The notes under the pieces: generated by a model
What the model saw: only the letters and a program-made list of their open reading frames with translations
What the model was told of the DNA's origin: nothing
Database searches by the model: none
In this document: one piece after another, positions 19,308 through 48,029 of the stretch
Numbering within the stretch: the stretch's first letter is position 1
How the letters are laid out: every line of letters begins with the position of its first letter
Assembly (NCBI GenBank): GCA_044892505.1
Contig: CM097883.1
Location: 394,630,001-394,694,000 of the forward strand
Source of the DNA: Schmidtea nova
Taxonomy: Eukaryota
Length of the DNA stretch: 64,000 nt
Reading direction: 5' to 3'
Position numbers and translations under genes: made by a program

Positions 19308-20510
19308 ATGAAATTATGTTATGCTTAATAAATATTATCTCAAAAAAGATTTAGATTTGTCCCAGTCTGTTTTTGTTCTGACTTGAGTACTATTTTTGTG
19401 ATTTGTTTCAATTATTTTTATTGAATGTAAAAATATTTATTTCTCTGATGTTTAAAAATATTAATGCATGCTTCATTCGCTCTTACAGTTCTCTAACTGA
19501 TGCTTCATGCTCACATCTTTTGAACACTCTTATTTTAAATTTTGAATTTGGTGGTTAAAAATGATATGAAATAAAATCCATTTGATATAAAATTGTCTCT
19601 AAAAACAAAAATAATTAAAATACTATTTATCTAAATTAATAATTACAAATGGCGGTTTAAATTAAAACAATATTGGTCATGATCTTGATGACGTCATAAT
19701 ATGTGCTATGTAAACACTGAGTTATTATAAATGAATTTGTGTGCTACGTAAAAACTAATGATTACGAGTGGTGCCGTCACTATGCCCTACTAGTATCCAC
19801 ACATTAGTGGCATTACCAACGTTTCTTTGCAAAGGGTAACTAGTGGTTAAAATGTGTGCTTTTAATAACCCACTGATATTGTAATAATTTATGATTCAAT
19901 TACCATTAGATACCTGTGTTGGGCCAAAACGCAATTTGTTTTAATAAAACGATAACCCAATAGGTAGAGAACGCGCAAGATTCCATTTTTAACCTTAGCT
20001 TCCATTAAAAATCCAACAATTAAGTGGAAAACACCAAAAGGTGAAGATGAATCAAAACACAGCAACCGGTAGAATGCGCGCTAACTGCGAATTTATAAAT
20101 ATTTTCACTGAAATCTCGAGAAAAATTAAAAGCAGAATGTTTGGAAGCTAGAATAGGCAAAAAACCCATGGAAAGTGCCCATAAAGAACAGAATTTTATC
20201 ATAAAACCTTCAGTACAGAAAAATTAACAAAATTTTAGAAGAAAATTGTGAATTTATCACAAAATTTCACATATAACAATAGAAAGAATTAATATGGATC
20301 GAAAATCATAAATTAAATCAAATCGAACAAATTTCGATTCAAACATAGAAATTTTGAATTAAAATAAATTATTTATAGTTTATAAAAAATTATTATACAT
20401 AAATATGGAATTAATTTTCGGAAAATCATTAGAATTAATTTAGAAAAAATTAAGAGAAAATTCTAGAACAATTTGTTTTATTGCACTACCGGAGATAGAG
20501 AAAATTTGAT

Positions 20511-20538
20511 GGTATATATACCGCCATCAAAATGGCAG
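20511..20538 (+). promoter_or_regulatory. Putative LTR core promoter: TATA-like box plus paired YY1-type motifs
   Basis: GGTATATATACCGCCATCAAAATGGCAGA; conserved in diverged relics at 9703 and 17832 (minus) and repeated at 42927. Confidence 0.55.
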
Positions 20539-23500
20539 ATTTCAGATTTTGTGGAAAAAATTTTTTTGTTTTGCTAGCTAAGAGAATTTGTGAGAAGTTT
20601 TCCGAAAATTTTTATTGCTAACCTAATTAAAGAGAATTTGTACCATTTGCCTCAGAAATTTAGAATTGAAGATATTGTTGAAAGGATTCAATTTATTGGA
20701 AAATCGGAATTGGTCAAAATTTAGTTCCCGGAGCACGAACCTTTTTAGTAGAAAACAAAATTTCTTCCTGGAGTTTGAAATGTTAGGTTTATTTTACTTT
20801 TGTTTTATTTTAAACTGATTCGAGGGGTATGGGATCGTCGGCAATCATGCCTGTCGATCATCCCATTCCTCACGTTCGTATTATTTAAAAATGTATTATT
20901 TTTGTTATTTTATATAATGCAATTATTTTATTTTGATATTATTAAATATTAAAAATTTATTTTATTCAGTTTGATTTTGAAAATATTTTTGTTTATTATA
21001 CTCACAAGTTCCCAAAACACCTAAAATTACTATGAGAATTGTCGAAATAAACTTATGAAATTAAATAAATTTTTTTTTATCTCCCATATCTTCTGACGAT
21101 CCGTCCAGCCTTGGTTGTGCGGATCTGTTAGTAGCCTGGGTGGATCGTTGTCTGATTGGTAATCGGCCAGCCCATATTTCCACTTTAAGGTGAGGCTCAT
21201 ACATCCAAATTCTCGTCATCCCAACTGGGGAATCGTGGTTTGGCCAAGAGCAAGGTTTTGTTATACTAATGATTTGTATTATAATAGAGTATCATATTTT
21301 TATTATCTACATAAGCAATTTCGTAATACAACATAATAATTTCTACCTCATGTCTTGAAATCTAAAATAGGAAATATTATTGATTAAAAAGTCGACTCGT
21401 ACTCACCTTCACCTTCACACTCTCAACAACGTTCATCTCATAAGAAAATGCAAGAAAAATGGATGCTGATGATGAAAAGAAAATTGTTCGAAATAATGCT
21501 CAAGTCTAGAATAATGCTCATGAAGTGAAATAAATTGTGAAACAAGTATTGATTTAATCTGAATTAAAGCTCATTATGGTCTAAATAAGTTTTCCTGTGA
21601 ATCTTGTTTTTCGAGAGCCTGAAATTCCTAAGTGAAGTGTCCCGAAAAATTCGCGTACACTTTGATTGGGAAATTCATGCTCAACAAAACCGAAATTTAC
21701 TTTACTTGATATTAAAAACATTCGTTGAAAAATTTTATAACTTATTTTTATTTTTATCTTTATTTAGCATATAAATTTTTTTTTATTATTGAATGCTTAT
21801 TTAGATTTCGAAATTTATGGATAAAAATTTATTATCATTTCATTTGGATCAGAAATAAAAATTTACTTTTTATTATGTTGAAAAGATTTTATATGGAAAA
21901 AATTGTAAACCAAATTTGGTTCCTAATATTATTAATATATAAAAGATTTTATCATTTCATAAAATTCCCGAGAATTTGAAAATCAAAAGTTATATTAAAC
22001 CCCATAAAATTTATAGATTGAAATTTTATTATTATATTAAAAAACTCTTATCATTTTATAAAAATACGAATTGGAAATTTTATAGAAAATTTTTTGGTTA
22101 ATATATATTCTAAAATCTAAAAAGTTAAAAACCTATCTTATAAAAATTAAAAATTTTATCATTAGTAAATTTTTCATGAAACTATAAATTAAAAAATTCA
22201 TAAAAAGCATTATAAAACTTATTATTATTTTAATTTAAAATTATTATTATTTTAATTTAAAAATATTTTATATAGTGTACTTGAATTATAATATAACCCC
22301 CCCACGATATCTTAAAAATAATGATACATCACTCATTGCAAGAAATCACACCCTTTACACTCAATAGCATCATCCATACTAATACACCAGCAACATACAT
22401 ATAAAACACAATACACACATACACAGTGTCATTCAACAACATCCAACAATCACATACACACCAACAAACCATACCAAAAATTTCACACAGCCATGCTAGT
22501 TAGAATCGTACGTCCAACCACACTCACAAGCACTCAATTGTTTTAAATCACTCATCATACAATCACACACAAACACAATAGTAACAATAGAACACACAGT
22601 CATCATACTACACCTCATCCACCAATAAATCATTTATTCTCATCCAACAGTCAAGTCAACATACAGACACATATAATCACATACAATCTCCTGTACTATC
22701 AATGAAAAATTCATAATAAACCTGTAAAAGTGTATCAACAATCAAACTCGAAATGATAGCATCCCACATCATACATAGACATGCATACCTCCAAAAAGAC
22801 AATGCCAAGGTTTCATCCCTTCAACCACCACAAAATACCATATTCATTTTACTATTTTTTTTTTATAAGTCGGAAACTTCTGGTAAAAATGAGAACCAAC
22901 AACCAAAAAACGATATTTATTTTTAAATAAAATCAATAATAAACTATTAGTCTTTATTATAAAGTAAATTAAGCTTTCATATAAAATCAATAATCACGAA
23001 CAATGGTTATTTTTATTATAAAGAGAATAAAAATCTTTTATCGATCAACGTTGCGCAAATACCGAGGAAAACTGATTGTTTGAGGAGTGAATGAGAAATC
23101 TCAAAATAAATTCCACTCAAAAACAGAAATTTGTGAAGAACTGTTAGAAGATTTCTTCGGAAAATGCTGGATCCTATTATTGACAATCCTGTTCACTTGT
23201 ATTCTCATGGCGCTGACCTTTATAACTTTAGTTGTTGAGAAGTGAACAGATGCTTTCTGAATTCCCGTGTTCAATTGGGAGGATATTGACATAATGTTTG
23301 AGCAATTCATTTAGATATATTCCGATAGAAATCAATAACTGATGCCTTGTAGGAAGATTCGTAAAGGTTTTATCAATTCAGATATTCCTTTGGAACTAGA
23401 TAACTCTATTGGCAGCTTAGGATTGACGTTGGGAGATAAGCACGCATAACATTGAAAATTCCAATAGACGTTTAAAATCCGACGAAAATTACATGTTGGA

Positions 23501-24585
23501 ATAAAAATGTTGAATCGATGGAAGCACACTTTCTTTTGATGTAGAGAGAAGATTTCTGAGGTGATGAAGCGATCCCAGGGAGAAATCCGAGTCCTGAGAA
23601 TATATATGGTAAAGGAAGTGAAGAATAAAACTGAAAGTTTACCTGTAGAGACAACTGGATAGGAGAATTCTATTATTGAGTTCGATATCTGCAAAAATCG
23701 ATAATTATATAACATTAACATATTATAATGTAAACATTAACCAATCAGGTTGCGATATTTACCTGTTTAAAACAATGACCTGGAAAGTGATAATTGTTAA
23801 ATAAATTTTTTTTTTGTTGCTTGCATGAAATGAGGAAATCCAGGAAGAAAATTTTAATATGACAGAATTATTTTTTGTAAGTCGTAAAATAGTCTTTACA
23901 TGAGTAAATAAAACATCTAGGTCATCAAAGTTGTTTCAATTAGCTACATTGTAATCGATGTAGTTGTCAAGGCCGCGGAAAAGTTTTCAAAGAATGAAAA
24001 TATAAAAATTTCAGTAAAATTATAAATGTTATTTTTCTAAGCAAGATAGACAATAGGATTTGAATTTTCGAAAACAAAATTTAATTTAAAATCTGAAAAT
24101 ATAGGGATTTAACTAAAATCAATAGATAATAATTAAAATAAATATCTAGGTAGTTCATATCGATACCGTTGCTAATGCCTCGGCAAATTTTGGAAAAATT
24201 AAATAAAAATAAAAAAATTTAGAAAATTACAATTATGTTTCTGCAAGATAGACATTAGGAATAAGGAATAAGTGAGATATCGTTAAATTTATCGACATAG
24301 AAAATTACAAATTTAGGAGAATCTCGAAACTAATAATAAAAAGTTTAGTTAAAAATCATTAAAAATCCAATACCGTGAATAGATGTGTTAATAAAATGGG
24401 TTACCCTTTTTGATTTCCCGGATTGAGAGTTGATAAGCATATCCGTGAAAAAACTCGCGATCAAATATGTGAGAACTCCTTAACTTATTGCATTAATGAA
24501 TGAACTAATTAATTTTTGTGTATGATGATAATTTAGTAAATATTATACGATAACCAATGTCTTAAATGTTCGAACTTTTCTAGCA

Positions 24586-25158
24586 ATGAACCCAATGCAA
24601 CAACTTGAAGAGATCCGGGCGTTATTGCTAGAAAACGCCAAGCACAACAAAAGGGTCGATGCACGGTTGGCCGAACTGGAAGCCAAGGGCGCATCCAACG
24701 TAGATGCCCTCCAGATAATGACCGGCCGCATGGAAAAATTCCGGGCCCGCTGTCGCGAGATGGAGGCGACATGGTCCGATGGGGAAACAGTGGAGAAGCT
24801 CAAGAAGCAAAATCAGATGCTGCTCCAGCAGGCAGCCGAGGACGCCATGCGATTGCGAGCATGTCGAGTTTCCATGCGGGAGCAGGAGCTCACCAATCAG
24901 AAGCTACAGGTAGATAGCGGTCTTATAACGGCCATTCTGCCAAAGCCCCAATTCCCACCTCACGAGCTGTTCCCGGTGAGGGTGGAGGAAGAGATAGCAG
25001 CAGCCGCGGCTCCAGTCAAACCAAAGCGATGGAGGCCCAGTAAAGGGGCAAGGGCCCGCAACAAGCGCCGGCAAGAAGCGCGAGTTTTGGGGCAATTGAG
25101 GGTCGAGGCCTCAAAAATTGGTAGTCTATCGATCGACCTGACGCAGGCACCCTTTTGA
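24586..25158 (+). CDS. LTR-encoded 190-aa protein: coiled coil, Arg-rich motif and NES-like tail
   Basis: Intact GC-rich ORF inside an AT-rich LTR; preceded by CTTTTCTAG|CA-ATG; contains KPKRWRPSKGARARNKRRQEAR and ends ...IGSLSIDL. Confidence 0.75.
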   Translation: MNPMQQLEEIRALLLENAKHNKRVDARLAELEAKGASNVDALQIMTGRMEKFRARCREMEATWSDGETVEKLKKQNQMLLQQAAEDAMRLRACRVSMREQELTNQKLQVDSGLITAILPKPQFPPHELFPVRVEEEIAAAAAPVKPKRWRPSKGARARNKRRQEARVLGQLRVEASKIGSLSIDLTQAPF

Positions 25159-25623
25159 ACACTTCACATTTTTTTTTTATTGTGATTTTAGTAACAAATG
25201 TTATCATTTTATTATGAAATTATAAGTTTGTAATTGTTTTTTTTTGTATTTGATTGCATGGAGATAAAAGTAAATATAAAGATATTTGAATTAGTATTAA
25301 ACAAACCACCGTCGGCGAAAATGCTCAAATAAAAATCTCGTAATAAACATATACAGTGATAGAACAGATAAATTAAGGGGGACAAAAATGGGCAAGAAAC
25401 CTTCTATCGGTAGCCCTTGGACCCAGGAGATATTCGGTCAATCATAGTTTCGTATTGACGACGCTCACTGATTGCGAATACCCACCCACTTGTTACAGTA
25501 CCAACGTTACATAGTGACGGGTAACAAGGTGGTAATTTCAATGTTTTATGTGTTGAGTTGTTGATGAGAGCCATAGAAACGTCAAGGTCATATTGACGGT
25601 CAACAACCCACCATATAAAAATT

Positions 25624-25642
25624 TGGGGGCTCAGCCGGGATT
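25624..25642 (+). promoter_or_regulatory. Primer-binding site, tRNA-Pro-like
   Basis: TGGGGGCTCAGCCGGGATT matches the complement of the tRNA-Pro 3' end (TGGGGGCTCGTCCGGGATT) with 2 mismatches; lies 10 nt after the LTR end. Confidence 0.8.
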
Positions 25643-25928
25643 CTCGATTTAGCTAGTTTGTTTTGTGTGAAGCGAAAATCAATGGAAATGACTTTACGTG
25701 GGAATTTATTAATGTTTTTGTGTTGGAAAGATAAAATATTTTAAAGAAAAACGAGATTTGGTAAAAGTTTTGTAAAAATCGATAATCATTTGAGTACTTT
25801 CGACGAAAATGGGAAAAATTTATGCTTGACTATTAATATTATTTATATTGCTATTATTATTTTTACGACAATAGTTATTTTATACCATTATAAGTATTAT
25901 TATTAGGATTATAATTATAAACAGTACG

Positions 25929-25947
25929 ATTATTATTATTATTATTA

Positions 25948-26020
<73 letters not shown>

Positions 26021-26037
26021 TACCATTATTATTATTA
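25929..26037. repeat. (ATT)n microsatellite abutting an assembly gap
   Basis: ATT run directly before the N stretch. Confidence 0.95.
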
Positions 26038-26042
26038 GGATT

Positions 26043-26234
26043 NNNNNNNNNNNNNNNNNNNNNNNNNNNNNNNNNNNNNNNNNNNNNNNNNNNNNNNNNN
26101 NNNNNNNNNNNNNNNNNNNNNNNNNNNNNNNNNNNNNNNNNNNNNNNNNNNNNNNNNNNNNNNNNNNNNNNNNNNNNNNNNNNNNNNNNNNNNNNNNNNN
26201 NNNNNNNNNNNNNNNNNNNNNNNNNNNNNNNNNN
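26043..26234. other. Assembly gap (192 N) inside the giant element
   Basis: N run; true size unknown. Confidence 1.
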
Positions 26235-26899
26235 AGTAGAGAATATCGTTTTAAGTACCATTTTGAATTAAGATTTGGAAAAATTTGGAAAATAAAAAGT
26301 TCCGAATCAAAATTACCGCGAAAGCGAATAAAAGTTAAGCCGAAAAAACGATCTTTAAGCCCCACGAACAGCCAACGATTGAAATTGAGAACGATTAATA
26401 ACAACAGAGCGTAGAATAAGTGTCTTTAATATAAATAAACGTCAAACATAGCATAGGATAAAAAGTTGAGCCGGAATGATCCAAAAGTCTAAGAAAATCA
26501 CGGGTAAAATAGTCAAAATACAAAATCGCGACAAATGAATCCCACGAACAACCAATAATCGTAAAATTGTTCAAATAACGTCCATAGAGCGTAGAAAGTG
26601 AGTACGCAGCACCGGCAAGTGGAAAATACCTCGAAAGATAGAATTTGACACCGAAATCCGCAAAAAGTGTAGAAAATCGCCGCTAAGAAATTCAAAAGAT
26701 TGAAGAAATTACGGAATTTTGACCCAAGAAAGCAGTAACACCGAGTATTAATGATAGTATAGATATCAGGATTATTATTATTATCATTTTAACAATAGAA
26801 AGAGTAATTTGGTCAAATAATAAAACCGATTTATTATATTTTTATTATAATTATTACGTAATAATATATAAGAAAAATATTGGGTAAATTGCCGCATAA

Positions 26900-27095
26900 C
26901 GCGCATTATTATTATTATCATTATAATTGCTATTATTACTATTATTATTATCATTTTAGTTATTATTACTAGTAGTACTATAAGCATCTTAGTATAATTA
27001 TTATTATTACTATTATTATCATTATTATCATTAATATTATCATTATTACTGTTATTATCATGAGTGTTACTGTAGATGTCATTATTATTACTAAC
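26900..27095. repeat. Imperfect (ATT/ATC/ACT)n low-complexity tract
   Basis: Degenerate trinucleotide run. Confidence 0.8.
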
Positions 27096-27849
27096 GATAT
27101 CAATGTTATGCTATTTGATTAAGAATGACCGAGGTATGACCCCTGTAATTTTATTTTGTTGGCAAGGAAGGACATGGAAAGTATCGGGTCTAGAAGAAAT
27201 AACGGCGAAAATGGAGCGATGCGTGAATTGTTTGTTTTAATTAATATAATAATAAAAGTGGAGAATGAATGATATAATCTAATGAGTTTGAAGTTTGAAT
27301 GTTGAAAAAGATAGATTGTTGAAGTCAAAATGATGCATGGTGATATTGGAATGTTGATCGCGACTCAATTCGGGAATCGAAAACGGGAATAACTCTAAAA
27401 TCTTATGAAATCATAAAATAAAATCTAGCAACGACTTAAAAACAAATATAATCAAACAGGAAAAAGTGAGACTTAACGTAAATACGAAAATTGTGAGATG
27501 CCCAAAAATTGGGAACCTAGTAAAAGGAAATGTTATATGATCATACGATACGGGATAGAGTTCACGCAAATCACCTAGAAAACAAATATTCGAGTATACA
27601 AAAATTGCTTTCAGTAAACGAAAAATTACCAAAAATTGCGAGTGCTGTAAATAAAAATATAATTATCCTAAAATTGATAAAAAGAGTAAAAATCATGAAA
27701 ATTGTGTAAATAAATGTTTAATTATTTTTTATGTAGAAAATATTAGTATATTTAAAAAATATAAAAAATCATAAAAATCATGTACTTAATGGCTGATTAT
27801 TTTATTCAAAAAATATCGAATATGGACGAATGGAGAAAATTATAAAATA

Positions 27850-27990
27850 TAAAAAGGTAAAAATATAAAAATATAAAAATATAAAAATACAAAAATATAT
27901 GTATAAAAATGGCTGAATATTCTGTTAGTTAAAAATATAAAAATATAAAAATATAAAAATATAAAAATATAAAAATATATGTATAAAAAT
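27850..27990. repeat. AAAATATA 8-mer repeats with duplicated GTATAAAAATGGCTGA block
   Basis: Seen directly in the sequence. Confidence 0.8.
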
Positions 27991-28158
27991 GGCTGATTAT
28001 TCTGTTAATAGTAGTTTTGAAAAAATACAAAAATATATAAAAAATTATAAAAATTCGTGTACATAGCTGTTGAAGTTTTTATTATTTATTTTTCGTTCAA
28101 ATTATAATGAATGGTTAATTTAAAAAGTTATAAACACCAGTCATCATGAATATTTTAG

Positions 28159-28641
28159 ATGGAATCGATTGAGCATATTCTACTACGAATCGAGTTGTTT
28201 TTCGATTTTAAAAATGACCCATTGCAGGTGTTGAGCGAGAAACTCGAACGAGTAAATGGAATAAAAGATGAATTATTGTTGAATCCTAGACCACAACCTG
28301 AGAACCTAATAGTGATTGCAGGAATTGTGGGAACAACAAACGATATTTCGTTGGAAACGATTTATGAATTACAACGATTGCGACTGAATAATCCGAATTT
28401 TAATCTGAATATACAAGAATGGATTGGTAAGATCGATAAAATTATGGACAAGCTAGAGAGATCGATAAATCAACAGATCGATTCATTCGAAAGATTTTAT
28501 ATTTGTCGACAAAAAGAAGCGAACATTTTGTTCATGCCATGTGGGCATTTGTGTTATTGCCAGCCGTGCTCTAGAGAAATAAAGCGATGCGTAATCTGCA
28601 AACAGACAATTGATGACAAAATCGTCGTATTCTGTTCGTAA
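28159..28641 (+). CDS. 160-aa protein with C-terminal IAP-type RING (first Cys replaced by Phe)
   Basis: FYICRQKEANILFMPCGHLCYCQPCSREIKRCVICKQTI; TTTTAG directly before the ATG. Confidence 0.85.
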   Translation: MESIEHILLRIELFFDFKNDPLQVLSEKLERVNGIKDELLLNPRPQPENLIVIAGIVGTTNDISLETIYELQRLRLNNPNFNLNIQEWIGKIDKIMDKLERSINQQIDSFERFYICRQKEANILFMPCGHLCYCQPCSREIKRCVICKQTIDDKIVVFCS

Positions 28642-34662: not shown

Positions 34663-34702
34663 AAATTTAAAACCAGTGTAAATAAAATGTAAAAATGTGA
34701 AT

Positions 34703-37684: not shown

Positions 37685-39232
37685 ATGAATATACAACAAT
37701 TGATAGACATCCTAGATCAGGAGATGGCCAAAAGACAAGAGCAACTAAATCAAATGAGAAATTATGAACAAAGAATGGAAGCCATCCAAGAGAACGTTAA
37801 AATGATTGAAAAACGAACCCAAGAGATCAATAAAATAAAAGAGGAAAATGAGGAACTGCGAAAGATAATAATCGACAAGGCGCATGTCGAAGCTGAACTA
37901 GAAAATTATAAACGAGAGTACAGGGAAATGGAGAGAAAACTCGAGCATGAACAACGAAAGTCGGTACCGTTGAAAAATCAAGCAAGATTGAGAAAAGATG
38001 AGCTCGAAACTTATAAAAGAGATACCGAAACAAGGTATGACAACTCCATAAGATTCTATCAGCAGCAACTCGAAAGTGAAAGAAACAGATATGAAGCCAT
38101 GAAAAAGAAATGGGAAAAGTGTCGAGATGAAGCATTTGTTTTGAGAGGACAACCTCAAAAGAAGCTTAAAGTCAGAACAAGAAACATTGAACCTGAAAGC
38201 GAACAAGAAAAGATCATTAGAAAAGTTAAAGCAGAGGCTAGGAAATGGAAACAAGAACACCAAGATTTGTTGGAAATGGCTCGACACAGAAAAATGCTAC
38301 AGGAAGAATTACTAAGACGGAGAGACGTTCAAATCGAGGCTCTGAAAGAGGAATGTCATTGGTATGCAGACATACGTCATGAGGAAACGGAGAAACTCAG
38401 AAAAGAAATATTCCAGTTGAAAACGAGCGGACAGTTCAGAGAAAGAAGCATAAAGCATCAAATAAAGTGGCTAATAGAACAAGCCAGAACATGGAAAAAG
38501 ACCTGGAAAAGAACTCGAGACGAACTACGAGAATTCCCCAAGAAGCTGATGTCAATAAATGAAGCAGAATTGTGGGAAAATGCAGAAAAGCAAGAGATAG
38601 AAAACAAAGAATTAAGACGGCAAATTCAATTAAAAACCGAATGGAATCAAAGGAGAATGAAATTTACCAGGAATCAAGAAGCTCGCATCAAATATCTGGA
38701 ATTCGAAAACAGGCAATATGACCAACAGAAGAATATGGATGATCGAAGTATTGAAGAACTGACAAGAGAATTGACTATTGCAAACCGTGAAGTCAACGGA
38801 TATCGAGGAACAAATACTCATAAAGACATTGTTATTCAACACCAGCGACGGCAGATAGAAGAAACAAAGGCCGAATGTGAGAAAGCGATCCAGCAATCGC
38901 AGTATGAAATTGAAATGGCTATCCAAAGTTTGGAAGAAAACCGCCAAAACTATGAAAGAGAGATTGAAAGATTGAAAAATATGGAAAATACGAGAGAGCT
39001 CGAGATAGAAAAAGAACAGCTGAGTGAAGAACTCGATTATATGACCTATTTGCTAGATGAAGAGATAGAAATCTCAAGAACTTTGCGAGAGAGAGTTCAG
39101 AGCCTACAAAATCAACCTCCAATCATTCTATGGCCACTATATCCAACACCAATACAACCTGTACATTTGGAGCCAGAAAATCCTCAAATCGAAGATGAAG
39201 GGTTCGGAGAAATTGAAGAGACGTTTGTATAA
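37685..39232 (+). CDS. 515-aa long coiled-coil protein of unknown function
   Basis: Intact E/K/R/Q-rich ORF with heptad character; TTTTCAG|A precedes the ATG. Confidence 0.8.
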   Translation: MNIQQLIDILDQEMAKRQEQLNQMRNYEQRMEAIQENVKMIEKRTQEINKIKEENEELRKIIIDKAHVEAELENYKREYREMERKLEHEQRKSVPLKNQARLRKDELETYKRDTETRYDNSIRFYQQQLESERNRYEAMKKKWEKCRDEAFVLRGQPQKKLKVRTRNIEPESEQEKIIRKVKAEARKWKQEHQDLLEMARHRKMLQEELLRRRDVQIEALKEECHWYADIRHEETEKLRKEIFQLKTSGQFRERSIKHQIKWLIEQARTWKKTWKRTRDELREFPKKLMSINEAELWENAEKQEIENKELRRQIQLKTEWNQRRMKFTRNQEARIKYLEFENRQYDQQKNMDDRSIEELTRELTIANREVNGYRGTNTHKDIVIQHQRRQIEETKAECEKAIQQSQYEIEMAIQSLEENRQNYEREIERLKNMENTRELEIEKEQLSEELDYMTYLLDEEIEISRTLRERVQSLQNQPPIILWPLYPTPIQPVHLEPENPQIEDEGFGEIEETFV

Positions 39233-39507
39233 ATAATAAAAGTGAATGTAAAGTGTAAAAAGAAATTGAAATGTAGTGTAAAAAGAAAACGTTGTAAAGA
39301 AATGTAAAAAGAAAAAGTTGTAAAATATATCCAAAAAAAAAAAAAATTTAAATAAAAAGCAGAAAAAAATAAAAAATTCAATAAAAATTAGAAAAAATGA
39401 AAAACAAATAAAAATTAGAAAATGATAAAAATGATAAAAATGATAAAAACAAAAAACAAAATTAATAAAACTGTAGAAAAGAGTTATGAAAATTCAAATT
39501 ATAGAAA

Positions 39508-40083
39508 ATGAGACTATTGAAGCAAAGATCAGAACCAGAACAACAAACGATATCAAAAGAAAGATTCAAAAAATGGAAAAGAGCAACAGAGCAATATTAT
39601 CAAGACCAAATAGACCAATTGAAGGAAGTAGTGAGCAAAGATAGAAAATATATCGCACAAATGGAGCAAGAGTGCGAGACGATGGAAATAATCAAGCGAG
39701 AAAATTATCTATTTCGCCAACAAAATGGTCTCACTCAAAAATATTGCGACAGACAGAAGCAAGAGATTGACAGACTCAAAAGGGAAATAAGCAGTGAACA
39801 GAACACTGTTAATAAAAGGAGAATTAAGATCGAGTCATTACAACGATCCTTGAAGAGCAAACAGAAAAAGATTATAAAAAGAGAGAAACAGATAATAAAG
39901 TTGAAAAGTGAAATCATAGAAGCAAAATTCGATACGTTCAAAGCAAAGAAAGTTGTAGAAATTAAAACGGCAGAAAACTACGTCCTCAAAGAGAAAAGGC
40001 GAAAAGAAGCAGACGAGATTGCAAAAATGGGTAACTGGAAGCCAGAAAGTCCGTTAAAGCTAAATGAAGAGACGAAAGAATAA
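39508..40083 (+). CDS. 191-aa basic coiled-coil protein
   Basis: Intact ORF; TTATAG|AAA precedes the ATG. Confidence 0.75.
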   Translation: MRLLKQRSEPEQQTISKERFKKWKRATEQYYQDQIDQLKEVVSKDRKYIAQMEQECETMEIIKRENYLFRQQNGLTQKYCDRQKQEIDRLKREISSEQNTVNKRRIKIESLQRSLKSKQKKIIKREKQIIKLKSEIIEAKFDTFKAKKVVEIKTAENYVLKEKRRKEADEIAKMGNWKPESPLKLNEETKE

Positions 40084-40178
40084 AATATATCTAAACTCAT
40101 GTAAATATCCCTGTAAAAATATCAAAGAGAAAATTTGACAAATCATTAAACAAATTTGAATCTATAAATCTATAGAAA

Positions 40179-41003
40179 ATGAACAATCTAATGAGGATCA
40201 CAACAACCATCATGATATTTATAATTACAAACTGCCGAAGCGAAGAAGCATTGAGTCAATGTCAAGCAAGCCATCCATTTAGAAGATCCGATAGCATTTG
40301 CGTAAGCTATCAAGAAATTTGTATCAGCAGAAATGAGGAGTGTCAACAGATCCAACTACAATGTCAACAATGTCCTAAACCCAGAGAAGATTCAATCACC
40401 ATCCTTAAACAATTGAGAAATGAAACTCAACAATTAATCCAATTACAAATCTCCTTAACCAAAAGAAACAATCTTCAACTAAAGAAATAGCTCGAAAACC
40501 AATCATCCTTCAAACAGTTAACGACCGAACTAAAGAAATTGAGCAAGTTAATAGAAAAATCTCTAAATAATAAAGATGAAGTTAATGAGGAAAGATCAAG
40601 TTTCACAGAGGAGTTAAATCAAAAACTAAAAACTCAACTTCATCAAACCGAGAGAATTATAAAGCAATTGATATTACCCGAAAAGCAAAAGGAGATTATC
40701 CCTAAACAAGGATCAACCAACGAAGACGTCAGAGACCGAGAAGCAGCCATCACAGTCGTTCTACAAGGCATCAGTCTTTTCGCGGTCATAATGATCCTTA
40801 GCATGGTTGCATCAATCGGATTAGAGAAAATGAAATTAGAGAAAGCGAAAATCCAGCTGAATACCATCAAACGAATCACCCTTGAAGACAACAACCCGGC
40901 AAAAAATTTTCTAAGATCAGTATTTGAAGATCCAGTTCCAAGACATCCTAATCCTGAGACATCTACAACCTCGGTGCAGATGAATTACTTCTATAAACAA
41001 TAA
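40179..41003 (+). CDS. Type I membrane protein 1 (274 codons) interrupted by one in-frame TAG at 40488-40490
   Basis: Signal peptide MNNLMRITTTIMIFIITNCRS and Cys-rich/coiled ectodomain. ORF-track entries 40179-40490 and 40539-41003 share a frame with no other stop. TM helix AAITVVLQGISLFAVIMILSMVASIGL. Confidence 0.75.
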
Positions 41004-41205: not shown

Positions 41206-42000
41206 ATGAAATCGTACCGAGAAGTTTTTCTAATCGCCATGATCACAACAATTTGTTGTCATCTTGAAGAGACCCGGAAATCAAGCCAATTAAACCCAAA
41301 TCAACCAGATAATAAAGAATCATTTGAAATCTCTAACAACAAACAACTATCCGAAAAGATCGAGCAAGCCAAAATCGAAATTCAAAATACCCTTTTCAAT
41401 CAAAATGATGAAATTTCAAGTCTAAAAAGAATAGCAAGGATAATATTAGCCGATTTAGCGATCAGAGATACATTCGAGGATATTTTTGATAATGATCGAG
41501 AAACCCGTGACGCAATAAAAAGTCTCACCAAAGAACTTAAAAGGAATGTAGGCAAGTTAATCGATCAGCTAACGATAAATTCATCAAGCCCGAAATGTCT
41601 GAAACAAATCCAGCAAATTCATCATAACCTGTCCCAGTAGATTTCCGAAGTAGGAAACCAAACGGCACAACAACTGAGAAAGGCTTATTTCGAGAACCTG
41701 GCATTTAAGAATAAAATCCACGATCACGTAAAAGAGATATCGAAACCGGATAACAATCAAGACAGAGACAAGTGCAGAGTATCCCTCCTATCATCCGAAC
41801 GAATTCTCGGGATCTGCCTGATCATCCTTAACTTTTTCTTAATAATCGGAATTTGTGGTATAATATGGTTAGGCTTGACCGCCACAAGAATAATGAACAA
41901 CATGACCTCCAAACAATCCCGAAGAGAAGATGACAAGAAACAGTTGATCAATTCCGAGTCATTCAAACTATTCCAGTCGAAGATCCAACCAATTCAATAA
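41206..42000 (+). CDS. Type I membrane protein 2 (264 codons) interrupted by one in-frame TAG at 41638-41640
   Basis: Signal peptide MKSYREVFLIAMITTICCHL. Manual translation past the TAG stays open for 119 codons to TAA at 41998-42000 and includes TM ILGICLIILNFFLIIGICGIIWLGL. Confidence 0.75.
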
Positions 42001-42332
42001 TAAATTTGATAATTTAACAAACTTAATAAACTTGATAAAACTATTATCCGAGTCGTTGTAGACTCATATTGAATTTTGATTAGCCGCTGTAGGCACATAT
42101 ATTACATTACATTTAATTTTGCTTGCGAGTCGATGTAGACTCATATTTATGTATATGTGTAATTTTATTAATTTTTTTTTTATAAACTTTTTATTTTTAT
42201 TGTCGCGAACGGCATGATCACGACCAAGTAGCTCGTGTATAATGTACAACCTTTTGACCTTTGATTAGTCTTGGTTCTTAACCCCTCTGAGAAATTGCGG
42301 GACGCAATTTTTGCGGGCCCCCGAGTATTTTA

Positions 42333-45300
42333 TGTTGGGCCAAAACGCAATTTGTTTTAATAAAACGATAACCCAATAGGTAGAGAACGCGCAAGATTCC
42401 ATTTTTAACCTTAGCTTCCATTAAAAATCCAACAATTAAGTGGAAAACACCAAAAGGTGAAGATGAATCAAAACACAGCAACCGGTAGAATGCGCGCTAA
42501 CTGCGAATTTATAAATATTTTCACTGAAATCTCGAGAAAAATTAAAAGCAGAATGTTTGGAAGCTAGAATAGGCAAAAAACCCATGGAAAGTGCCCATAA
42601 AGAACAGAATTTTATCATAAAACCTTCAGTACAGAAAAATTAACAAAATTTTAGAAGAAAATTGTGAATTTATCACAAAATTTCACATATAACAATAGAA
42701 AGAATTAATATGGATCGAAAATCATAAATTAAATCAAATCGAACAAATTTCGATTCAAACATAGAAATTTTGAATTAAAATAAATTATTTATAGTTTATA
42801 AAAAATTATTATACATAAATATGGAATTAATTTTCGGAAAATCATTAGAATTAATTTAGAAAAAATTAAGAGAAAATTCTAGAACAATTTGTTTTATTGC
42901 ACTACCGGAGATAGAGAAAATTTGATGGTATATATACCGCCATCAAAATGGCAGATTTCAGATTTTGTGGAAAAAATTTTTTTGTTTTGCTAGCTAAGAG
43001 AATTTGTGAGAAGTTTTCCGAAAATTTTTATTGCTAACCTAATTAAAGAGAATTTGTACCATTTGCCTCAGAAATTTAGAATTGAAGATATTGTTGAAAG
43101 GATTCAATTTATTGGAAAATCGGAATTGGTCAAAATTTAGTTCCCGGAGCACGAACCTTTTTAGTAGAAAACAAAATTTCTTCCTGGAGTTTGAAATGTT
43201 AGGTTTATTTTACTTTTGTTTTATTTTAAACTGATTCGAGGGGTATGGGATCGTCGGCAATCATGCCTGTCGATCATCCCATTCCTCACGTTCGTATTAT
43301 TTAAAAATGTATTATTTTTGTTATTTTATATAATGCAATTATTTTATTTTGATATTATTAAATATTAAAAATTTATTTTATTCAGTTTGATTTTGAAAAT
43401 ATTTTTGTTTATTATACTCACAAGTTCCCAAAACACCTAAAATTACTATGAGAATTGTCGAAATAAACTTATGAAATTAAATAAATTTTTTTTTATCTCC
43501 CATATCTTCTGACGATCCGTCCAGCCTTGGTTGTGCGGATCTGTTAGTAGCCTGGGTGGATCGTTGTCTGATTGGTAATCGGCCAGCCCATATTTCCACT
43601 TTAAGGTGAGGCTCATACATCCAAATTCTCGTCATCCCAACTGGGGAATCGTGGTTTGGCCAAGAGCAAGGTTTTGTTATACTAATGATTTGTATTATAA
43701 TAGAGTATCATATTTTTATTATCTACATAAGCAATTTCGTAATACAACATAATAATTTCTACCTCATGTCTTGAAATCTAAAATAGGAAATATTATTGAT
43801 TAAAAAGTCGACTCGTACTCACCTTCACCTTCACACTCTCAACAACGTTCATCTCATAAGAAAATGCAAGAAAAATGGATGCTGATGATGAAAAGAAAAT
43901 TGTTCGAAATAATGCTCAAGTCTAGAATAATGCTCATGAAGTGAAATAAATTGTGAAACAAGTATTGATTTAATCTGAATTAAAGCTCATTATGGTCTAA
44001 ATAAGTTTTCCTGTGAATCTTGTTTTTCGAGAGCCTGAAATTCCTAAGTGAAGTGTCCCGAAAAATTCGCGTACACTTTGATTGGGAAATTCATGCTCAA
44101 CAAAACCGAAATTTACTTTACTTGATATTAAAAACATTCGTTGAAAAATTTTATAACTTATTTTTATTTTTATCTTTATTTAGCATATAAATTTTTTTTT
44201 ATTATTGAATGCTTATTTAGATTTCGAAATTTATGGATAAAAATTTATTATCATTTCATTTGGATCAGAAATAAAAATTTACTTTTTATTATGTTGAAAA
44301 GATTTTATATGGAAAAAATTGTAAACCAAATTTGGTTCCTAATATTATTAATATATAAAAGATTTTATCATTTCATAAAATTCCCGAGAATTTGAAAATC
44401 AAAAGTTATATTAAACCCCATAAAATTTATAGATTGAAATTTTATTATTATATTAAAAAACTCTTATCATTTTATAAAAATACGAATTGGAAATTTTATA
44501 GAAAATTTTTTGGTTAATATATATTCTAAAATCTAAAAAGTTAAAAACCTATCTTATAAAAATTAAAAATTTTATCATTAGTAAATTTTTCATGAAACTA
44601 TAAATTAAAAAATTCATAAAAAGCATTATAAAACTTATTATTATTTTAATTTAAAATTATTATTATTTTAATTTAAAAATATTTTATATAGTGTACTTGA
44701 ATTATAATATAACCCCCCCACGATATCTTAAAAATAATGATACATCACTCATTGCAAGAAATCACACCCTTTACACTCAATAGCATCATCCATACTAATA
44801 CACCAGCAACATACATATAAAACACAATACACACATACACAGTGTCATTCAACAACATCCAACAATCACATACACACCAACAAACCATACCAAAAATTTC
44901 ACACAGCCATGCTAGTTAGAATCGTACGTCCAACCACACTCACAAGCACTCAATTGTTTTAAATCACTCATCATACAATCACACACAAACACAATAGTAA
45001 CAATAGAACACACAGTCATCATACTACACCTCATCCACCAATAAATCATTTATTCTCATCCAACAGTCAAGTCAACATACAGACACATATAATCACATAC
45101 AATCTCCTGTACTATCAATGAAAAATTCATAATAAACCTGTAAAAGTGTATCAACAATCAAACTCGAAATGATAGCATCCCACATCATACATAGACATGC
45201 ATACCTCCAAAAAGACAATGCCAAGGTTTCATCCCTTCAACCACCACAAAATACCATATTCATTTTACTATTTTTTTTTTATAAGTCGGAAACTTCTGGT

Positions 45301-48029
45301 AAAAATGAGAACCAACAACCAAAAAACGATATTTATTTTTAAATAAAATCAATAATAAACTATTAGTCTTTATTATAAAGTAAATTAAGCTTTCATATAA
45401 AATCAATAATCACGAACAATGGTTATTTTTATTATAAAGAGAATAAAAATCTTTTATCGATCAACGTTGCGCAAATACCGAGGAAAACTGATTGTTTGAG
45501 GAGTGAATGAGAAATCTCAAAATAAATTCCACTCAAAAACAGAAATTTGTGAAGAACTGTTAGAAGATTTCTTCGGAAAATGCTGGATCCTATTATTGAC
45601 AATCCTGTTCACTTGTATTCTCATGGCGCTGACCTTTATAACTTTAGTTGTTGAGAAGTGAACAGATGCTTTCTGAATTCCCGTGTTCAATTGGGAGGAT
45701 ATTGACATAATGTTTGAGCAATTCATTTAGATATATTCCGATAGAAATCAATAACTGATGCCTTGTAGGAAGATTCGTAAAGGTTTTATCAATTCAGATA
45801 TTCCTTTGGAACTAGATAACTCTATTGGCAGCTTAGGATTGACGTTGGGAGATAAGCACGCATAACATTGAAAATTCCAATAGACGTTTAAAATCCGACG
45901 AAAATTACATGTTGGAATAAAAATGTTGAATCGATGGAAGCACACTTTCTTTTGATGTAGAGAGAAGATTTCTGAGGTGATGAAGCGATCCCAGGGAGAA
46001 ATCCGAGTCCTGAGAATATATATGGTAAAGGAAGTGAAGAATAAAACTGAAAGTTTACCTGTAGAGACAACTGGATAGGAGAATTCTATTATTGAGTTCG
46101 ATATCTGCAAAAATCGATAATTATATAACATTAACATATTATAATGTAAACATTAACCAATCAGGTTGCGATATTTACCTGTTTAAAACAATGACCTGGA
46201 AAGTGATAATTGTTAAATAAATTTTTTTTTTGTTGCTTGCATGAAATGAGGAAATCCAGGAAGAAAATTTTAATATGACAGAATTATTTTTTGTAAGTCG
46301 TAAAATAGTCTTTACATGAGTAAATAAAACATCTAGGTCATCAAAGTTGTTTCAATTAGCTACATTGTAATCGATGTAGTTGTCAAGGCCGCGGAAAAGT
46401 TTTCAAAGAATGAAAATATAAAAATTTCAGTAAAATTATAAATGTTATTTTTCTAAGCAAGATAGACAATAGGATTTGAATTTTCGAAAACAAAATTTAA
46501 TTTAAAATCTGAAAATATAGGGATTTAACTAAAATCAATAGATAATAATTAAAATAAATATCTAGGTAGTTCATATCGATACCGTTGCTAATGCCTCGGC
46601 AAATTTTGGAAAAATTAAATAAAAATAAAAAAATTTAGAAAATTACAATTATGTTTCTGCAAGATAGACATTAGGAATAAGGAATAAGTGAGATATCGTT
46701 AAATTTATCGACATAGAAAATTACAAATTTAGGAGAATCTCGAAACTAATAATAAAAAGTTTAGTTAAAAATCATTAAAAATCCAATACCGTGAATAGAT
46801 GTGTTAATAAAATGGGTTACCCTTTTTGATTTCCCGGATTGAGAGTTGATAAGCATATCCGTGAAAAAACTCGCGATCAAATATGTGAGAACTCCTTAAC
46901 TTATTGCATTAATGAATGAACTAATTAATTTTTGTGTATGATGATAATTTAGTAAATATTATACGATAACCAATGTCTTAAATGTTCGAACTTTTCTAGC
47001 AATGAACCCAATGCAACAACTTGAAGAGATCCGGGCGTTATTGCTAGAAAACGCCAAGCACAACAAAAGGGTCGATGCACGGTTGGCCGAACTGGAAGCC
47101 AAGGGCGCATCCAACGTAGATGCCCTCCAGATAATGACCGGCCGCATGGAAAAATTCCGGGCCCGCTGTCGCGAGATGGAGGCGACATGGTCCGATGGGG
47201 AAACAGTGGAGAAGCTCAAGAAGCAAAATCAGATGCTGCTCCAGCAGGCAGCCGAGGACGCCATGCGATTGCGAGCATGTCGAGTTTCCATGCGGGAGCA
47301 GGAGCTCACCAATCAGAAGCTACAGGTAGATAGCGGTCTTATAACGGCCATTCTGCCAAAGCCCCAATTCCCACCTCACGAGCTGTTCCCGGTGAGGGTG
47401 GAGGAAGAGATAGCAGCAGCCGCGGCTCCAGTCAAACCAAAGCGATGGAGGCCCAGTAAAGGGGCAAGGGCCCGCAACAAGCGCCGGCAAGAAGCGCGAG
47501 TTTTGGGGCAATTGAGGGTCGAGGCCTCAAAAATTGGTAGTCTATCGATCGACCTGACGCAGGCACCCTTTTGAACACTTCACATTTTTTTTTTATTGTG
47601 ATTTTAGTAACAAATGTTATCATTTTATTATGAAATTATAAGTTTGTAATTGTTTTTTTTTGTATTTGATTGCATGGAGATAAAAGTAAATATAAAGATA
47701 TTTGAATTAGTATTAAACAAACCACCGTCGGCGAAAATGCTCAAATAAAAATCTCGTAATAAACATATACAGTGATAGAACAGATAAATTAAGGGGGACA
47801 AAAATGGGCAAGAAACCTTCTATCGGTAGCCCTTGGACCCAGGAGATATTCGGTCAATCATAGTTTCGTATTGACGACGCTCACTGATTGCGAATACCCA
47901 CCCACTTGTTACAGTACCAACGTTACATAGTGACGGGTAACAAGGTGGTAATTTCAATGTTTTATGTGTTGAGTTGTTGATGAGAGCCATAGAAACGTCA
48001 AGGTCATATTGACGGTCAACAACCCACCA
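42333..48029 (+). repeat. 3' LTR of giant element (5,697 bp)
   Basis: Copy of 19917-25613; followed by TSD CCTG. Confidence 0.96.
47002..47574 (+). CDS. Second copy of the LTR-encoded 190-aa protein
   Basis: Translation identical to 24586-25158. Confidence 0.75.
   Translation: MNPMQQLEEIRALLLENAKHNKRVDARLAELEAKGASNVDALQIMTGRMEKFRARCREMEATWSDGETVEKLKKQNQMLLQQAAEDAMRLRACRVSMREQELTNQKLQVDSGLITAILPKPQFPPHELFPVRVEEEIAAAAAPVKPKRWRPSKGARARNKRRQEARVLGQLRVEASKIGSLSIDLTQAPF

What the first reader, a model, noticed from the sequence alone, without database searches (positions are those of the whole stretch)
19917..48029. 28-kb LTR retroelement with 5.7-kb LTRs that has replaced pol with a host-signalling gene array
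Seen: TG...CA direct repeats at constant offset 22,416, TSD CCTG, tRNA-Pro-like PBS, and about 10 same-strand intronless ORFs including an aspartic protease, with no RT, RNase H or integrase motif. Known: a 4-bp TSD with TG/CA ends marks integrase-mediated insertion, and the two LTRs are identical at insertion, so this copy is young. Giant elements with multi-kb LTRs (Burro) are reported in Schmidtea mediterranea. Inference: a non-autonomous, still-mobilised giant element whose payload is apoptosis/ubiquitin/TNF-pathway effectors, organised like a virus accessory-gene cassette.
Basis: partly seen in the sequence, partly recalled or inferred. Interest (0 to 1): 0.95.

Follow-up and report, generated by a model that had tools for sequence, protein, structure and literature searches.

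The report
Pol-less giant Burro-like LTR retroelement
A 28-kb virus-like mobile element with two identical 5.7-kb ends carries cell-death, ubiquitin and TNF-pathway genes but no gene for copying itself; this kind of cargo is already published for planarian 'Burro' elements, so only the missing replication genes and the tidy separate-gene layout are new.

Summary
Two direct repeats of 5,697 bp (19917-25613, 42333-48029) are 100% identical, end TG...CA, are flanked by CCTG on both sides, and a TGG-initiated primer-binding-like site lies 10 nt inside the 5' repeat. Diverged copies elsewhere in the window start at the same terminal base, so the terminus is biological. The 16.7-kb interior holds about ten same-strand ORFs: RING; SUMO-like + retropepsin + ankyrin; full-length TRAF; cIAP-like BIR-RING; coiled-coil proteins; small membrane proteins. 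No gag, CCHC, RT, RNase H or integrase was found in any frame, although the same searches found them easily in two small LTR elements upstream. The N gap (26043-26234) lies in a non-coding (ATT)n array in the leader, with no reading frame on either side. RING, Smc-like, MATH/TRAF, BIR, ankyrin and SUMO-like domains are published features of planarian Burro/GYPSM1 elements (PMC6431247), where they sit alongside gag and pol. This copy is best read as a gag- and pol-less, probably trans-dependent, Burro-like variant that inserted recently. One apparently new detail: six consecutive ORFs carry TGTA[AT]A starting 15-17 nt after the stop. Copy number, host species and Burro sequence identity could not be tested. 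Interest is moderate.

The parts
19913..19916 (.). left copy of the 4-bp target-site duplication (CCTG)
19917..25613 (+). 5' LTR, 5,697 bp, TG...CA, 100% identical to the 3' LTR. Its first 651 nt have diverged copies elsewhere in the window that start at the same base.
24586..25158 (+). 190-aa ORF inside the LTR (coiled coil plus arginine-rich tail), present again at 47002-47574. No Pfam or PDB relatives.
25624..25641 (+). primer-binding-site-like stretch starting TGG, 10 nt after the 5' LTR. tRNA identity not tested.
25887..26042 (.). (ATT)n microsatellite in the non-coding leader, running into the gap
26043..26234 (.). assembly gap (192 N, length estimated) in non-coding leader. No open frame on either side. 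Left unfilled.
26235..28158 (+). non-coding stretch with a second ATT-type array and an 80-nt/8-nt A-rich repeat
28159..28641 (+). 160-aa ORF with a C-terminal IAP-type RING (zf-C3HC4_3, 1.8e-12), 36% identical to the RING of the IAP-like ORF
29640..29913 (.). 13 copies of a 21-nt tandem repeat inside the 2.4-kb non-coding stretch 28642-31086
31087..33876 (+). 929-aa ORF: helical N-part; weak SUMO-like/Rad60-SLD hit (aa 132-181, E 0.004); retropepsin (aa 232-323, DTGA); ankyrin repeats (aa 475-565); acidic tract; hydrophobic segment
34018..34662 (+). 214-aa Q/N-rich plus coiled-coil ORF with no family match
34697..36160 (+). 487-aa full-length TRAF-like ORF (RING, TRAF zinc fingers, coiled coil, MATH/TRAF-C)
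36381..37550 (+). 389-aa IAP-like ORF (BIR 3.8e-16, C-terminal RING 8.6e-11). Best solved relative is cIAP1/BIRC2.
37685..39232 (+). 515-aa coiled-coil (Smc-like in composition) ORF. One distant metagenomic relative only.
39508..40083 (+). 191-aa basic coiled-coil ORF
40179..41003 (+). candidate small membrane protein gene: signal-peptide-like start, Cys-rich part, one transmembrane segment. Either two ORFs in one frame or one gene interrupted once by an in-frame stop.
41206..42000 (+). second candidate small membrane protein gene with the same layout: either two ORFs in one frame or one gene interrupted once by an in-frame stop. No detectable similarity to the first.
33892..40119 (+). span that holds the six post-stop motifs: TGTA[AT]A starts 15-17 nt after the stop of each of the six consecutive ORFs ending at 33876, 34662, 36160, 37550, 39232 and 40083. 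In five of the six a second copy follows 7-12 nt later.
42001..42332 (+). non-coding tail before the 3' LTR. No polypurine tract next to the LTR.
42333..48029 (+). 3' LTR, identical to the 5' LTR
48030..48033 (.). right copy of the 4-bp target-site duplication (CCTG)

Best explanation
This is a 28,113-bp LTR retroelement of the Burro kind, the giant Ty3/gypsy-like, provirus-like elements of dugesiid planarians. It keeps the cis-acting ends: 5.7-kb LTRs with TG/CA termini and a PBS-like site. It also keeps the family's accessory repertoire: RING, SUMO-like + protease + ankyrin, TRAF, cIAP-like, coiled-coil and small membrane proteins. It has no gag, reverse transcriptase, RNase H or integrase. 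Shown: the anatomy, the absence of these genes in the sequenced part, the integration hallmarks, and the identity of the LTRs. Inferred: (1) it was reverse-transcribed and integrated recently using proteins supplied by an autonomous relative, since it cannot supply them itself; (2) its cargo is expressed as separate messages, because each of six consecutive ORFs carries the same short signal at a fixed distance after its stop and the ORFs lie in different frames with A-rich spacers; (3) the cargo acts on the host cell's TNF/TRAF-cIAP, ubiquitin and apoptosis circuits, as proposed in the literature for Burro.
For: Integration hallmarks and identical LTRs. The terminus is shared by diverged copies at 9098 (+) and 18390 (-), so it is a family boundary and not an assembly edge. 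PBS-like site. Domain set matches that published for Burro/GYPSM1, including the same Pfam family PF11976 (PMC6431247). RT, RNase H, integrase, gag and CCHC are absent, with a positive control in the same window: RVT_1 at 1.8e-31 and 5.3e-27, plus RNase H, rve and one CCHC, in two decayed small LTR elements. The protease ORF runs uninterrupted from the retropepsin into ankyrin repeats and ends with the same post-stop motif as its neighbours. This argues for an evolved architecture and against a random recent deletion. Post-stop motif: 6 of 9 element ORFs against 0 of 25 control ORFs, P about 2e-7 after correction for the post-hoc choice of window.
Against: An N gap of only estimated length lies 430 nt inside the 5' LTR, near where gag would normally begin. 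No polypurine tract adjoins the 3' LTR. Only one copy could be examined, so propagation of this architecture is not shown. The 100% LTR identity could be inflated by assembly polishing. Sequence identity to published Burro entries and the host species could not be tested. The protease could be Ddi1-like instead of pol-derived: the best solved relative is yeast DDI1 at E 0.14, against a pairwise E of 2e-4 to a neighbouring element's protease. In that case nothing retroviral but the ends would remain.
Confidence: 0.6

Rival explanations
1. The element was autonomous when it inserted. Its gag and/or pol were lost afterwards by an internal deletion or rearrangement at this locus, or are missing only from the assembly (hidden in, or collapsed at, the gap and the tandem-repeat arrays).
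For: The gap lies in the leader where gag would be expected, next to microsatellite arrays that recombine and assemble poorly. The interior is 16.7 kb against up to 25 kb reported for Burro (PMC6431247); that shortfall is about the size of gag plus pol. About 5 kb (25614-31086) is non-coding apart from one small ORF.
Against: The gap is estimated at 192 nt and lies upstream of the protease, whereas RT-RH-IN follow the protease in Ty3/gypsy elements and in Burro1. The protease ORF continues in frame into ankyrin repeats with no pol remnant. All ORFs are complete and regularly punctuated. With identical LTRs there has been little time for a tidy secondary loss.
Confidence: 0.22
2. The pair of identical 5.7-kb repeats is not an LTR pair but a segmental duplication or a scaffolding or consensus artefact around a cluster of host genes.
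For: Zero differences over 5,697 bp. Two N gaps lie in the neighbourhood. The cargo consists of cellular-type genes. No RT, integrase or polypurine tract is present.
Against: Exact TG...CA ends with a terminal inverted repeat, a matching 4-bp flank across the two sides, and a PBS-like site directly inside the left repeat. Independent diverged copies begin at exactly the same terminal base. The flanks outside the repeats are unrelated. The domain set is that of a published retroelement family.
Confidence: 0.05
3. The element is an old, co-opted locus: a gene cluster now serving the host, with its LTRs kept identical by gene conversion and not by youth.
For: All cargo ORFs are intact, or interrupted at most twice. 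The cargo is highly diverged from any cellular homologue found. A large TRAF/MATH expansion is reported in the S. mediterranea transcriptome (PMC6109357).
Against: Gene conversion that keeps 5.7 kb free of any difference is less economical than a recent insertion. The neighbouring small LTR elements have terminal repeats at 96%. Related LTR fragments in the window are 60-70% diverged, typical of an active, turning-over family.
Confidence: 0.08

Closest known systems
Burro / GYPSM1 giant Ty3/gypsy-like LTR retroelements of Schmidtea mediterranea and other Dugesiidae (Jurka 2007; Grohme et al. 2018; Arkhipova & Yushenova 2019, PMC6431247)
   Same: Multi-kb LTRs, giant size, internal tandem repeats, and the same unusual accessory domains: RING/AIR1-type, Smc-like coiled coil, MATH/TRAF-C, BIR, ankyrin, SUMO-like PF11976 and a retropepsin. 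Accessory functions may exist as separate ORFs; the Dugesia tigrina (now Girardia tigrina) relative has TRAF as a separate ORF.
   Different: There is no Gag or CCHC, no dUTPase, RT, RNase H or integrase, and no recognisable env-like or BCL2-like part. The genes are separate cistrons in different frames instead of one polyprotein of about 4,900 aa. The protease lies upstream of TRAF and BIR and is fused to ankyrin repeats. Total length is 28.1 kb, against more than 30 kb. Nucleotide identity to Burro entries was not testable here.
LARD / TRIM-type non-autonomous LTR retrotransposons of plants (Kalendar et al. 2004, cited in PMC6431247)
   Same: LTRs and a primer-binding site without gag or pol, and dependence on proteins of an autonomous partner. 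This describes how the element would work; it is not a claim of membership.
   Different: LARDs and TRIMs have a non-coding interior. This element keeps ten or so intact protein genes and a protease.
Complex retroviruses and foamy-like endogenous retroviruses with accessory ORFs (as reviewed in PMC6431247)
   Same: Several accessory ORFs downstream of the core genes, on the same strand, aimed at host regulation.
   Different: Those retain gag, pol and env. Here only the accessory block and a protease remain.
Cellular TRAF2/3/5 with cIAP1/2 (TNF-receptor signalling pair) and Ddi1-type ubiquitin-like retropepsins
   Same: The TRAF ORF has the full RING, zinc-finger, coiled-coil and TRAF-C architecture. 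The IAP ORF has BIR plus RING as in cIAP1. The protease ORF pairs a ubiquitin-like stretch with a retropepsin, as Ddi1 does.
   Different: Identity is only 22-27% for TRAF. The genes are intronless and lie inside a mobile element. The Ddi1 likeness is weak (E 0.14) and the ubiquitin-like hit is below Pfam's threshold.

Membership tests
LTR retrotransposon (structural class) | two long direct terminal repeats in the same orientation | tested here: met
   5,697 bp, 100% identical
LTR retrotransposon (structural class) | TG...CA termini with a short terminal inverted repeat | tested here: met
   the same terminus is seen in diverged copies
LTR retrotransposon (structural class) | 4-6 bp target-site duplication | tested here: met
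   CCTG on both sides
LTR retrotransposon (structural class) | primer-binding site complementary to a tRNA 3' end next to the 5' LTR | tested here: inconclusive
   A TGG-initiated 18-nt stretch lies 10 nt after the LTR. No tool-supplied tRNA was available to compare, and no tRNA gene is in the window.
LTR retrotransposon (structural class) | polypurine tract next to the 3' LTR | tested here: not met
   The last 40 nt before 42333 are not purine-rich. An A4G6 run exists, but 12 kb upstream at 30382-30391.
LTR retrotransposon (structural class) | gag and pol (RT, RNase H, integrase) genes | tested here: not met
   positive control
Ty3/gypsy (Metaviridae) | RT of the Ty3/gypsy clade and the order PR-RT-RH-IN | tested here: not met
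   No RT is present. Only a retropepsin remains, weakly similar to the protease of a neighbouring gypsy-type element.
Burro / GYPSM1 | nucleotide or protein identity to the curated Burro-1 to -4 entries | not testable with these tools
   No planarian repeat library or genome is in the collections. The protein searches returned no close relatives.
Burro / GYPSM1 | accessory domains RING/AIR1, Smc-like, MATH_TRAF_C, BIR, ankyrin, SUMO-like | tested here: met
   against the list in PMC6431247. The Smc likeness rests on coiled-coil composition only, and the SUMO-like hit is weak (E 0.004).
Burro / GYPSM1 | N-terminal Gag with CCHC knuckles and C-terminal PR-dUTPase-RT-RH-IN in one giant ORF | tested here: not met
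   separate ORFs in different frames
Burro / GYPSM1 | total length above 30 kb | tested here: not met
   28,113 bp with the gap counted as 192
Burro / GYPSM1 | host is a dugesiid planarian | not testable with these tools
   About 30% GC fits. A host WD40 exon found only unnamed metagenomic relatives.
LARD/TRIM-type non-autonomous LTR elements | LTRs and PBS without gag or pol | tested here: met
LARD/TRIM-type non-autonomous LTR elements | non-coding internal domain | tested here: not met
   Ten or so intact ORFs, several with strong domain hits.

The most novel reading that the evidence does not exclude
This copy represents a lineage of 'satellite' proviruses derived from Burro-like elements. 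The lineage has shed gag, RT, RNase H, integrase and env, yet is still propagated, and it keeps an intact cassette of about ten separately expressed host-manipulating genes. Each gene is punctuated by its own conserved post-stop UGUA[A/U]A signal; five of the six first copies fit the PUF/Pumilio-type octamer pattern. On this reading selection acts on the cargo, and such elements contribute to the TRAF/MATH expansion reported for planarians.
Probability: 0.3. Interest if true: 0.7.

Novelty: new variant of a known kind. Interest (0 to 1): 0.4.

Why it matters
Burro elements are among the largest retroelements known and have been proposed to tinker with host apoptosis and ubiquitin pathways. If this architecture is multi-copy, a recently inserted relative that keeps only that tinkering cassette and the cis-acting ends would separate the cargo's function from replication. 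It would show that the accessory genes are maintained in their own right. It would also give a compact set of genes (TRAF, cIAP-like, RING, ubiquitin-like protease-ankyrin) and a candidate shared regulatory signal to look for in expression data. It further warns that part of the reported planarian TRAF/MATH expansion (PMC6109357) may be transposon-borne. If the copy is unique, or the gap hides gag and pol, it is simply one more Burro-type insertion.

Tried and rejected
1. Exact-protein look-ups of the TRAF, IAP and protease ORFs in public assemblies found nothing on record.
2. The word-indexed homologue search with the 515-aa coiled-coil ORF gave one distant metagenomic hit. The search with the TRAF ORF gave only vertebrate TRAF3/5 at 22-27% identity. 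The search with a host WD40 exon gave unnamed metagenomic hits, so the species was not identified.
3. The exhaustive representative search with the 929-aa ORF was swamped by ankyrin-repeat proteins and said nothing about the protease part. This was a poor choice of query on my part.
4. The single-sequence AlphaFold model of residues 1-345 of that ORF had mean pLDDT 39. It is unusable, so no fold search was run.
5. Rfam and tRNA scans of the window found nothing.
6. I considered that the two candidate small membrane genes might be paralogues. No similarity was found.
7. I considered that the flank just upstream of the element might be the end of an older LTR. The alignment does not hold to the end, so I rejected this.
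8. I considered that the A-rich spacers might be relics of poly(A) tails of captured mRNAs. The ORFs themselves are 41-49% A, so the contrast is too weak to argue from.
9. I considered that a YAG just before each ATG might be a splice acceptor. Three of these are simply the in-frame stop that defines the ORF, so this is not significant.
10. Grohme et al. 2018 is not held in the paper library, so Burro-2 to -4 architecture is known to me only through PMC6431247.
Full report
**The gap, tested first.** The window has two N runs, 26043-26234 (192) and 49303-49434 (132). The first lies 430 nt inside the 5' repeat. Its left flank is a 150-nt (ATT)n microsatellite (25887-26042). Its right flank is unique, A-rich, non-coding sequence. 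On the + strand no open stretch of 60 codons or more exists between 25614 and 27524. The two minus-strand 'ORFs' that the ORF listing draws through the Ns come from the repeat and the Ns. Nothing coding therefore reads into the gap from either side, and 'in frame or not' has no meaning here. What remains unknown is the gap's true length. The second gap also sits in a tandem-repeat array, so both look like unresolved arrays, not joins of unrelated contigs.

**The observation.** A BLAST of the window against itself gives one outstanding pair: 19917-25613 and 42333-48029, 5,697 bp, 100% identical, no gaps, offset 22,416.
- Each copy starts TG and ends CA, and the first and last seven bases form a 6-of-7 inverted repeat.
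- The four bases outside are CCTG on both sides, and the flanks beyond are unrelated. My arithmetic from base composition puts a chance 4-mer match at about 0.7%.
- Ten bases inside the left copy, an 18-nt stretch begins TGG (25624-25641). Its reverse complement ends CCA, as a tRNA 3' end does.
- Whether that tRNA is tRNA-Pro I could not test. The window has no tRNA gene and no tool supplied a tRNA sequence, so the assignment stays a lead from memory.
- No polypurine tract adjoins the right copy.
- The terminus is not an assembly edge. Diverged copies (about 69%) of the first 651 nt begin at exactly the same base at 9098 on the + strand and at 18390 on the - strand. A diverged copy of nt 5259-5609 lies at 60235-59897.
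The repeats are therefore LTRs of a family with older members nearby.

**What lies between the LTRs.** The interior (25614-42332, 16,719 bp counting the gap as 192) has about 5 kb of mostly non-coding, repeat-rich sequence holding one small ORF, then a dense same-strand gene block. Pfam and solved-structure searches give the following.
- 28159-28641: a 160-aa protein with an IAP-type RING (1.8e-12).
- 31087-33876: a 929-aa protein with a weak SUMO-like/Rad60-SLD hit (PF11976, E 0.004), a retropepsin (RVP 3.3e-5, above Pfam's threshold; DTGA and IIGTD present) and ankyrin repeats (1.8e-10).
- 34697-36160: a full-length TRAF with RING, TRAF zinc finger and MATH (8.7e-23). Its TRAF-C resembles TRAF1/2/3/5 at about 1e-24, and it covers 94% of the query in alignments to fish TRAF3 at 22-27% identity.
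- 36381-37550: a BIR-RING protein closest to cIAP1/BIRC2 (9e-15).
- 37685-39232 and 39508-40083: two coiled-coil proteins.
- 34018-34662: a Q/N-rich protein.
- 40179-41003 and 41206-42000: two candidate small membrane-protein genes.
The two RINGs are 36% identical to each other. Each membrane candidate consists of two open pieces in one frame. Each is therefore either two small ORFs or one gene interrupted once by an in-frame stop, which makes at most two breaks, both stops, in the whole element. An acidic open stretch of about 100 codons also lies just upstream of the protease ORF in the same frame, separated by one stop. I did not read any of these through.

**What is missing.** No reverse transcriptase, RNase H, integrase or gag family appears among the Pfam hits of the 75 open stretches of 60 aa or more on both strands of the interior. 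The table shows only the 25 best of 74 families, and anything hidden has E above about 0.0015. No frame of the element holds a CCHC knuckle or a Y/F-x-DD motif. The same window provides a positive control. Two ordinary small LTR elements upstream (about 4566-8216 and 11972-16173, terminal repeats 96% identical) give RVT_1 at 1.8e-31 and 5.3e-27, plus RNase H, integrase, a gag-like DUF7041 and one CCHC, even though their genes are decayed. The first is in at least six open pieces and the second in at least nine, through both stops and frameshifts. Using their pieces one at a time as tblastn queries against the giant element finds only a 21-aa match at the protease active site (pairwise E 2e-4 over 44 aa).

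Each of the six consecutive ORFs ending at 33876, 34662, 36160, 37550, 39232 and 40083 has TGTA[AT]A starting 15, 15, 16, 17, 17 or 17 nt after the stop. In five of the six a second copy follows 7-12 nt later.
- The motif is six times denser in the spacers than in the ORFs.
- Six of nine element ORFs have it at +15 to +17, against none of 25 control ORFs elsewhere in the window.
- The binomial probability is 5e-9, or about 2e-7 after allowing for my post-hoc choice of window.
- Together with the different reading frames and the A-rich spacers, this says the block is a set of punctuated cistrons, not a decayed polyprotein.
- Its role is inferred only. In S. mediterranea the poly(A) signal is AAUAAA and close variants, and no UGUA element is seen genome-wide (PMC5068929). 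This suggests an element-specific signal, if the host is that species or a close relative.
- Five of the six first copies fit the UGUANAUA pattern that PUF/Pumilio proteins bind; that pattern is established knowledge and was not tested here.

**Comparison with what is known.** Arkhipova and Yushenova (PMC6431247) summarise Jurka (2007) and Grohme et al. (2018).
- Burro1/GYPSM1 of Schmidtea mediterranea is a gypsy-like LTR element of more than 30 kb, present in thousands of copies.
- Its 4,873-aa ORF1 combines Gag with three CCHC knuckles, AIR1/RING, Smc, MATH_TRAF_C, a SUMO-like PF11976 domain, BCL2-like, an env-like region, PR, dUTPase, RT, RH and IN, together with BIR and ankyrin.
- The same motifs occur in Burro-2 to -4.
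- In a Dugesia tigrina (now Girardia tigrina) relative, TRAF is a separate upstream ORF.
- The authors argue that these elements are integrated proviruses that meddle with apoptosis and ubiquitination.
What differs here is the absence of gag, dUTPase, RT, RH, IN and any recognisable env or BCL2 part, the split into separate ORFs, the position of the protease upstream of TRAF and BIR fused to ankyrin, and a total of 28.1 kb. I found no paper in the library describing gag- and pol-less Burro derivatives. Grohme et al. itself is not held, so I cannot exclude that one of Burro-2 to -4 already has this form. Membership by sequence could not be tested: none of the collections holds a planarian genome or repeat library, and the protein searches returned no close relative. 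The host was not identified either. About 30% GC and the domain set fit a dugesiid planarian, but a host WD40 exon found only unnamed metagenomic relatives.

**How it most likely works.**
- Shown: an integrase-type insertion, with LTRs that have no difference in 5,697 bp. A Poisson 95% upper bound of three differences gives less than about 2.6e-4 differences per site summed over the two LTRs. Converting that to years needs a planarian substitution rate that I do not have. Assembly polishing could also flatter the identity. By this measure the insertion is younger than both neighbouring small elements, whose terminal repeats are 96% identical.
- Inferred: because the element encodes no gag, RT or integrase, the proteins came from an autonomous relative with compatible ends, as for plant LARD/TRIM elements. 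Unlike those, this one keeps a working-looking protein cassette.
- The TRAF-plus-cIAP-like pair, two further RING proteins and a ubiquitin-like + protease + ankyrin protein point to the TNF-receptor/NF-kB, ubiquitin and cell-death circuits. This is the same reading as proposed for Burro. It is an inference from domain families, not from any test.
- The protease's origin is open. Its best solved relative is the yeast DDI1 retropepsin (E 0.14 over 99 aa), and it sits behind a ubiquitin-like stretch as in Ddi1, but it also matches a neighbouring element's protease.
- The missing polypurine tract counts against easy plus-strand priming and remains unexplained.

**Rivals.**
- A deletion after insertion, or sequence hidden at the gap: about 0.22.
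- A co-opted locus with LTRs homogenised by gene conversion: about 0.08.
- A duplication or assembly artefact: about 0.05.
The evidence for and against each is given in the Rival explanations section of this report.

- PMC6431247 argues that Burro-like elements are proviruses of an animal.
- Three exact-protein look-ups were made before I reached that view. All returned nothing and no sequence was fetched.
- No fold search was run, because the only model was unusable.

**Verdict.** This is a new variant of a known kind: a gag- and pol-less Burro-like giant LTR element with a punctuated accessory-gene cassette. It is of moderate interest, pending a copy census and a comparison with the curated Burro entries.

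Noticed in passing
window 4566-8216: Small LTR retroelement on the + strand with about 125-bp terminal repeats 96% identical. It has a gag-like DUF7041, RT (1.8e-31), RNase H and integrase. Its genes are decayed into at least six open pieces by both stops and frameshifts. It served as a positive control.
   Followed up: partly
window 11972-16173: Second small LTR retroelement on the + strand with about 101-bp terminal repeats 96% identical. It has one CCHC knuckle, a protease, RT (5.3e-27), RNase H, and integrase H2C2 plus core. It is decayed into at least nine open pieces. Palindromic repeats lie just upstream at about 11848-11922.
   Followed up: partly
window 9098-9758 (+), 17811-18390 (-), 59897-60235 (-): Diverged (60-70%) fragments of LTRs related to the giant element's LTR. 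Two of them begin at exactly the same terminal base. What they once belonged to was not worked out.
   Followed up: partly
window 24586-25158 and 47002-47574: A 190-aa ORF inside each LTR, more GC-rich than its surroundings, with a coiled coil plus an arginine-rich tail and no Pfam or PDB relative. It could be an LTR-borne accessory gene or a chance ORF.
   Followed up: partly
window 33892-40119: TGTA[AT]A starts 15-17 nt after the stop of six consecutive ORFs, and in five of the six is repeated 7-12 nt later. Five of the six first copies fit the PUF-type UGUANAUA pattern. Function unknown.
   Followed up: yes
window 30382-30391: An A4G6 purine run of the kind usually seen as a polypurine tract, but 12 kb upstream of the 3' LTR, in the non-coding stretch before the protease ORF.
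   Followed up: no
window 29640-30002: Thirteen near-perfect copies of a 21-nt unit, followed by a 26-nt variant, in the element's non-coding region. On the minus strand this reads as a heptad repeat and produces spurious coiled-coil Pfam hits.
   Followed up: partly
window 725-1411 (-): Probable host exon encoding WD40 repeats. The closest protein in the databases is an unnamed 228-aa sequence from a JGI metagenome contig, 84% identical.
   Followed up: partly
window 55464-55958 (-): Open stretch with a nuclear-receptor-type C4 zinc finger (zf-C4, 6.9e-6). Probably an exon of a host nuclear receptor gene.
   Followed up: no
window 18246-18581 (+): Weak hit, below threshold, to organellar/viral type-B DNA polymerase (DNA_pol_B_2, E 1e-4). 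It overlaps one of the LTR-related fragments. It may be a Maverick/Polinton remnant or noise.
   Followed up: no
window 48439-48630 and 49167-49494: A 190-nt imperfect palindrome, and 15/45-nt tandem repeats that flank the second N gap (49303-49434) in inverted orientation, just downstream of the element.
   Followed up: no
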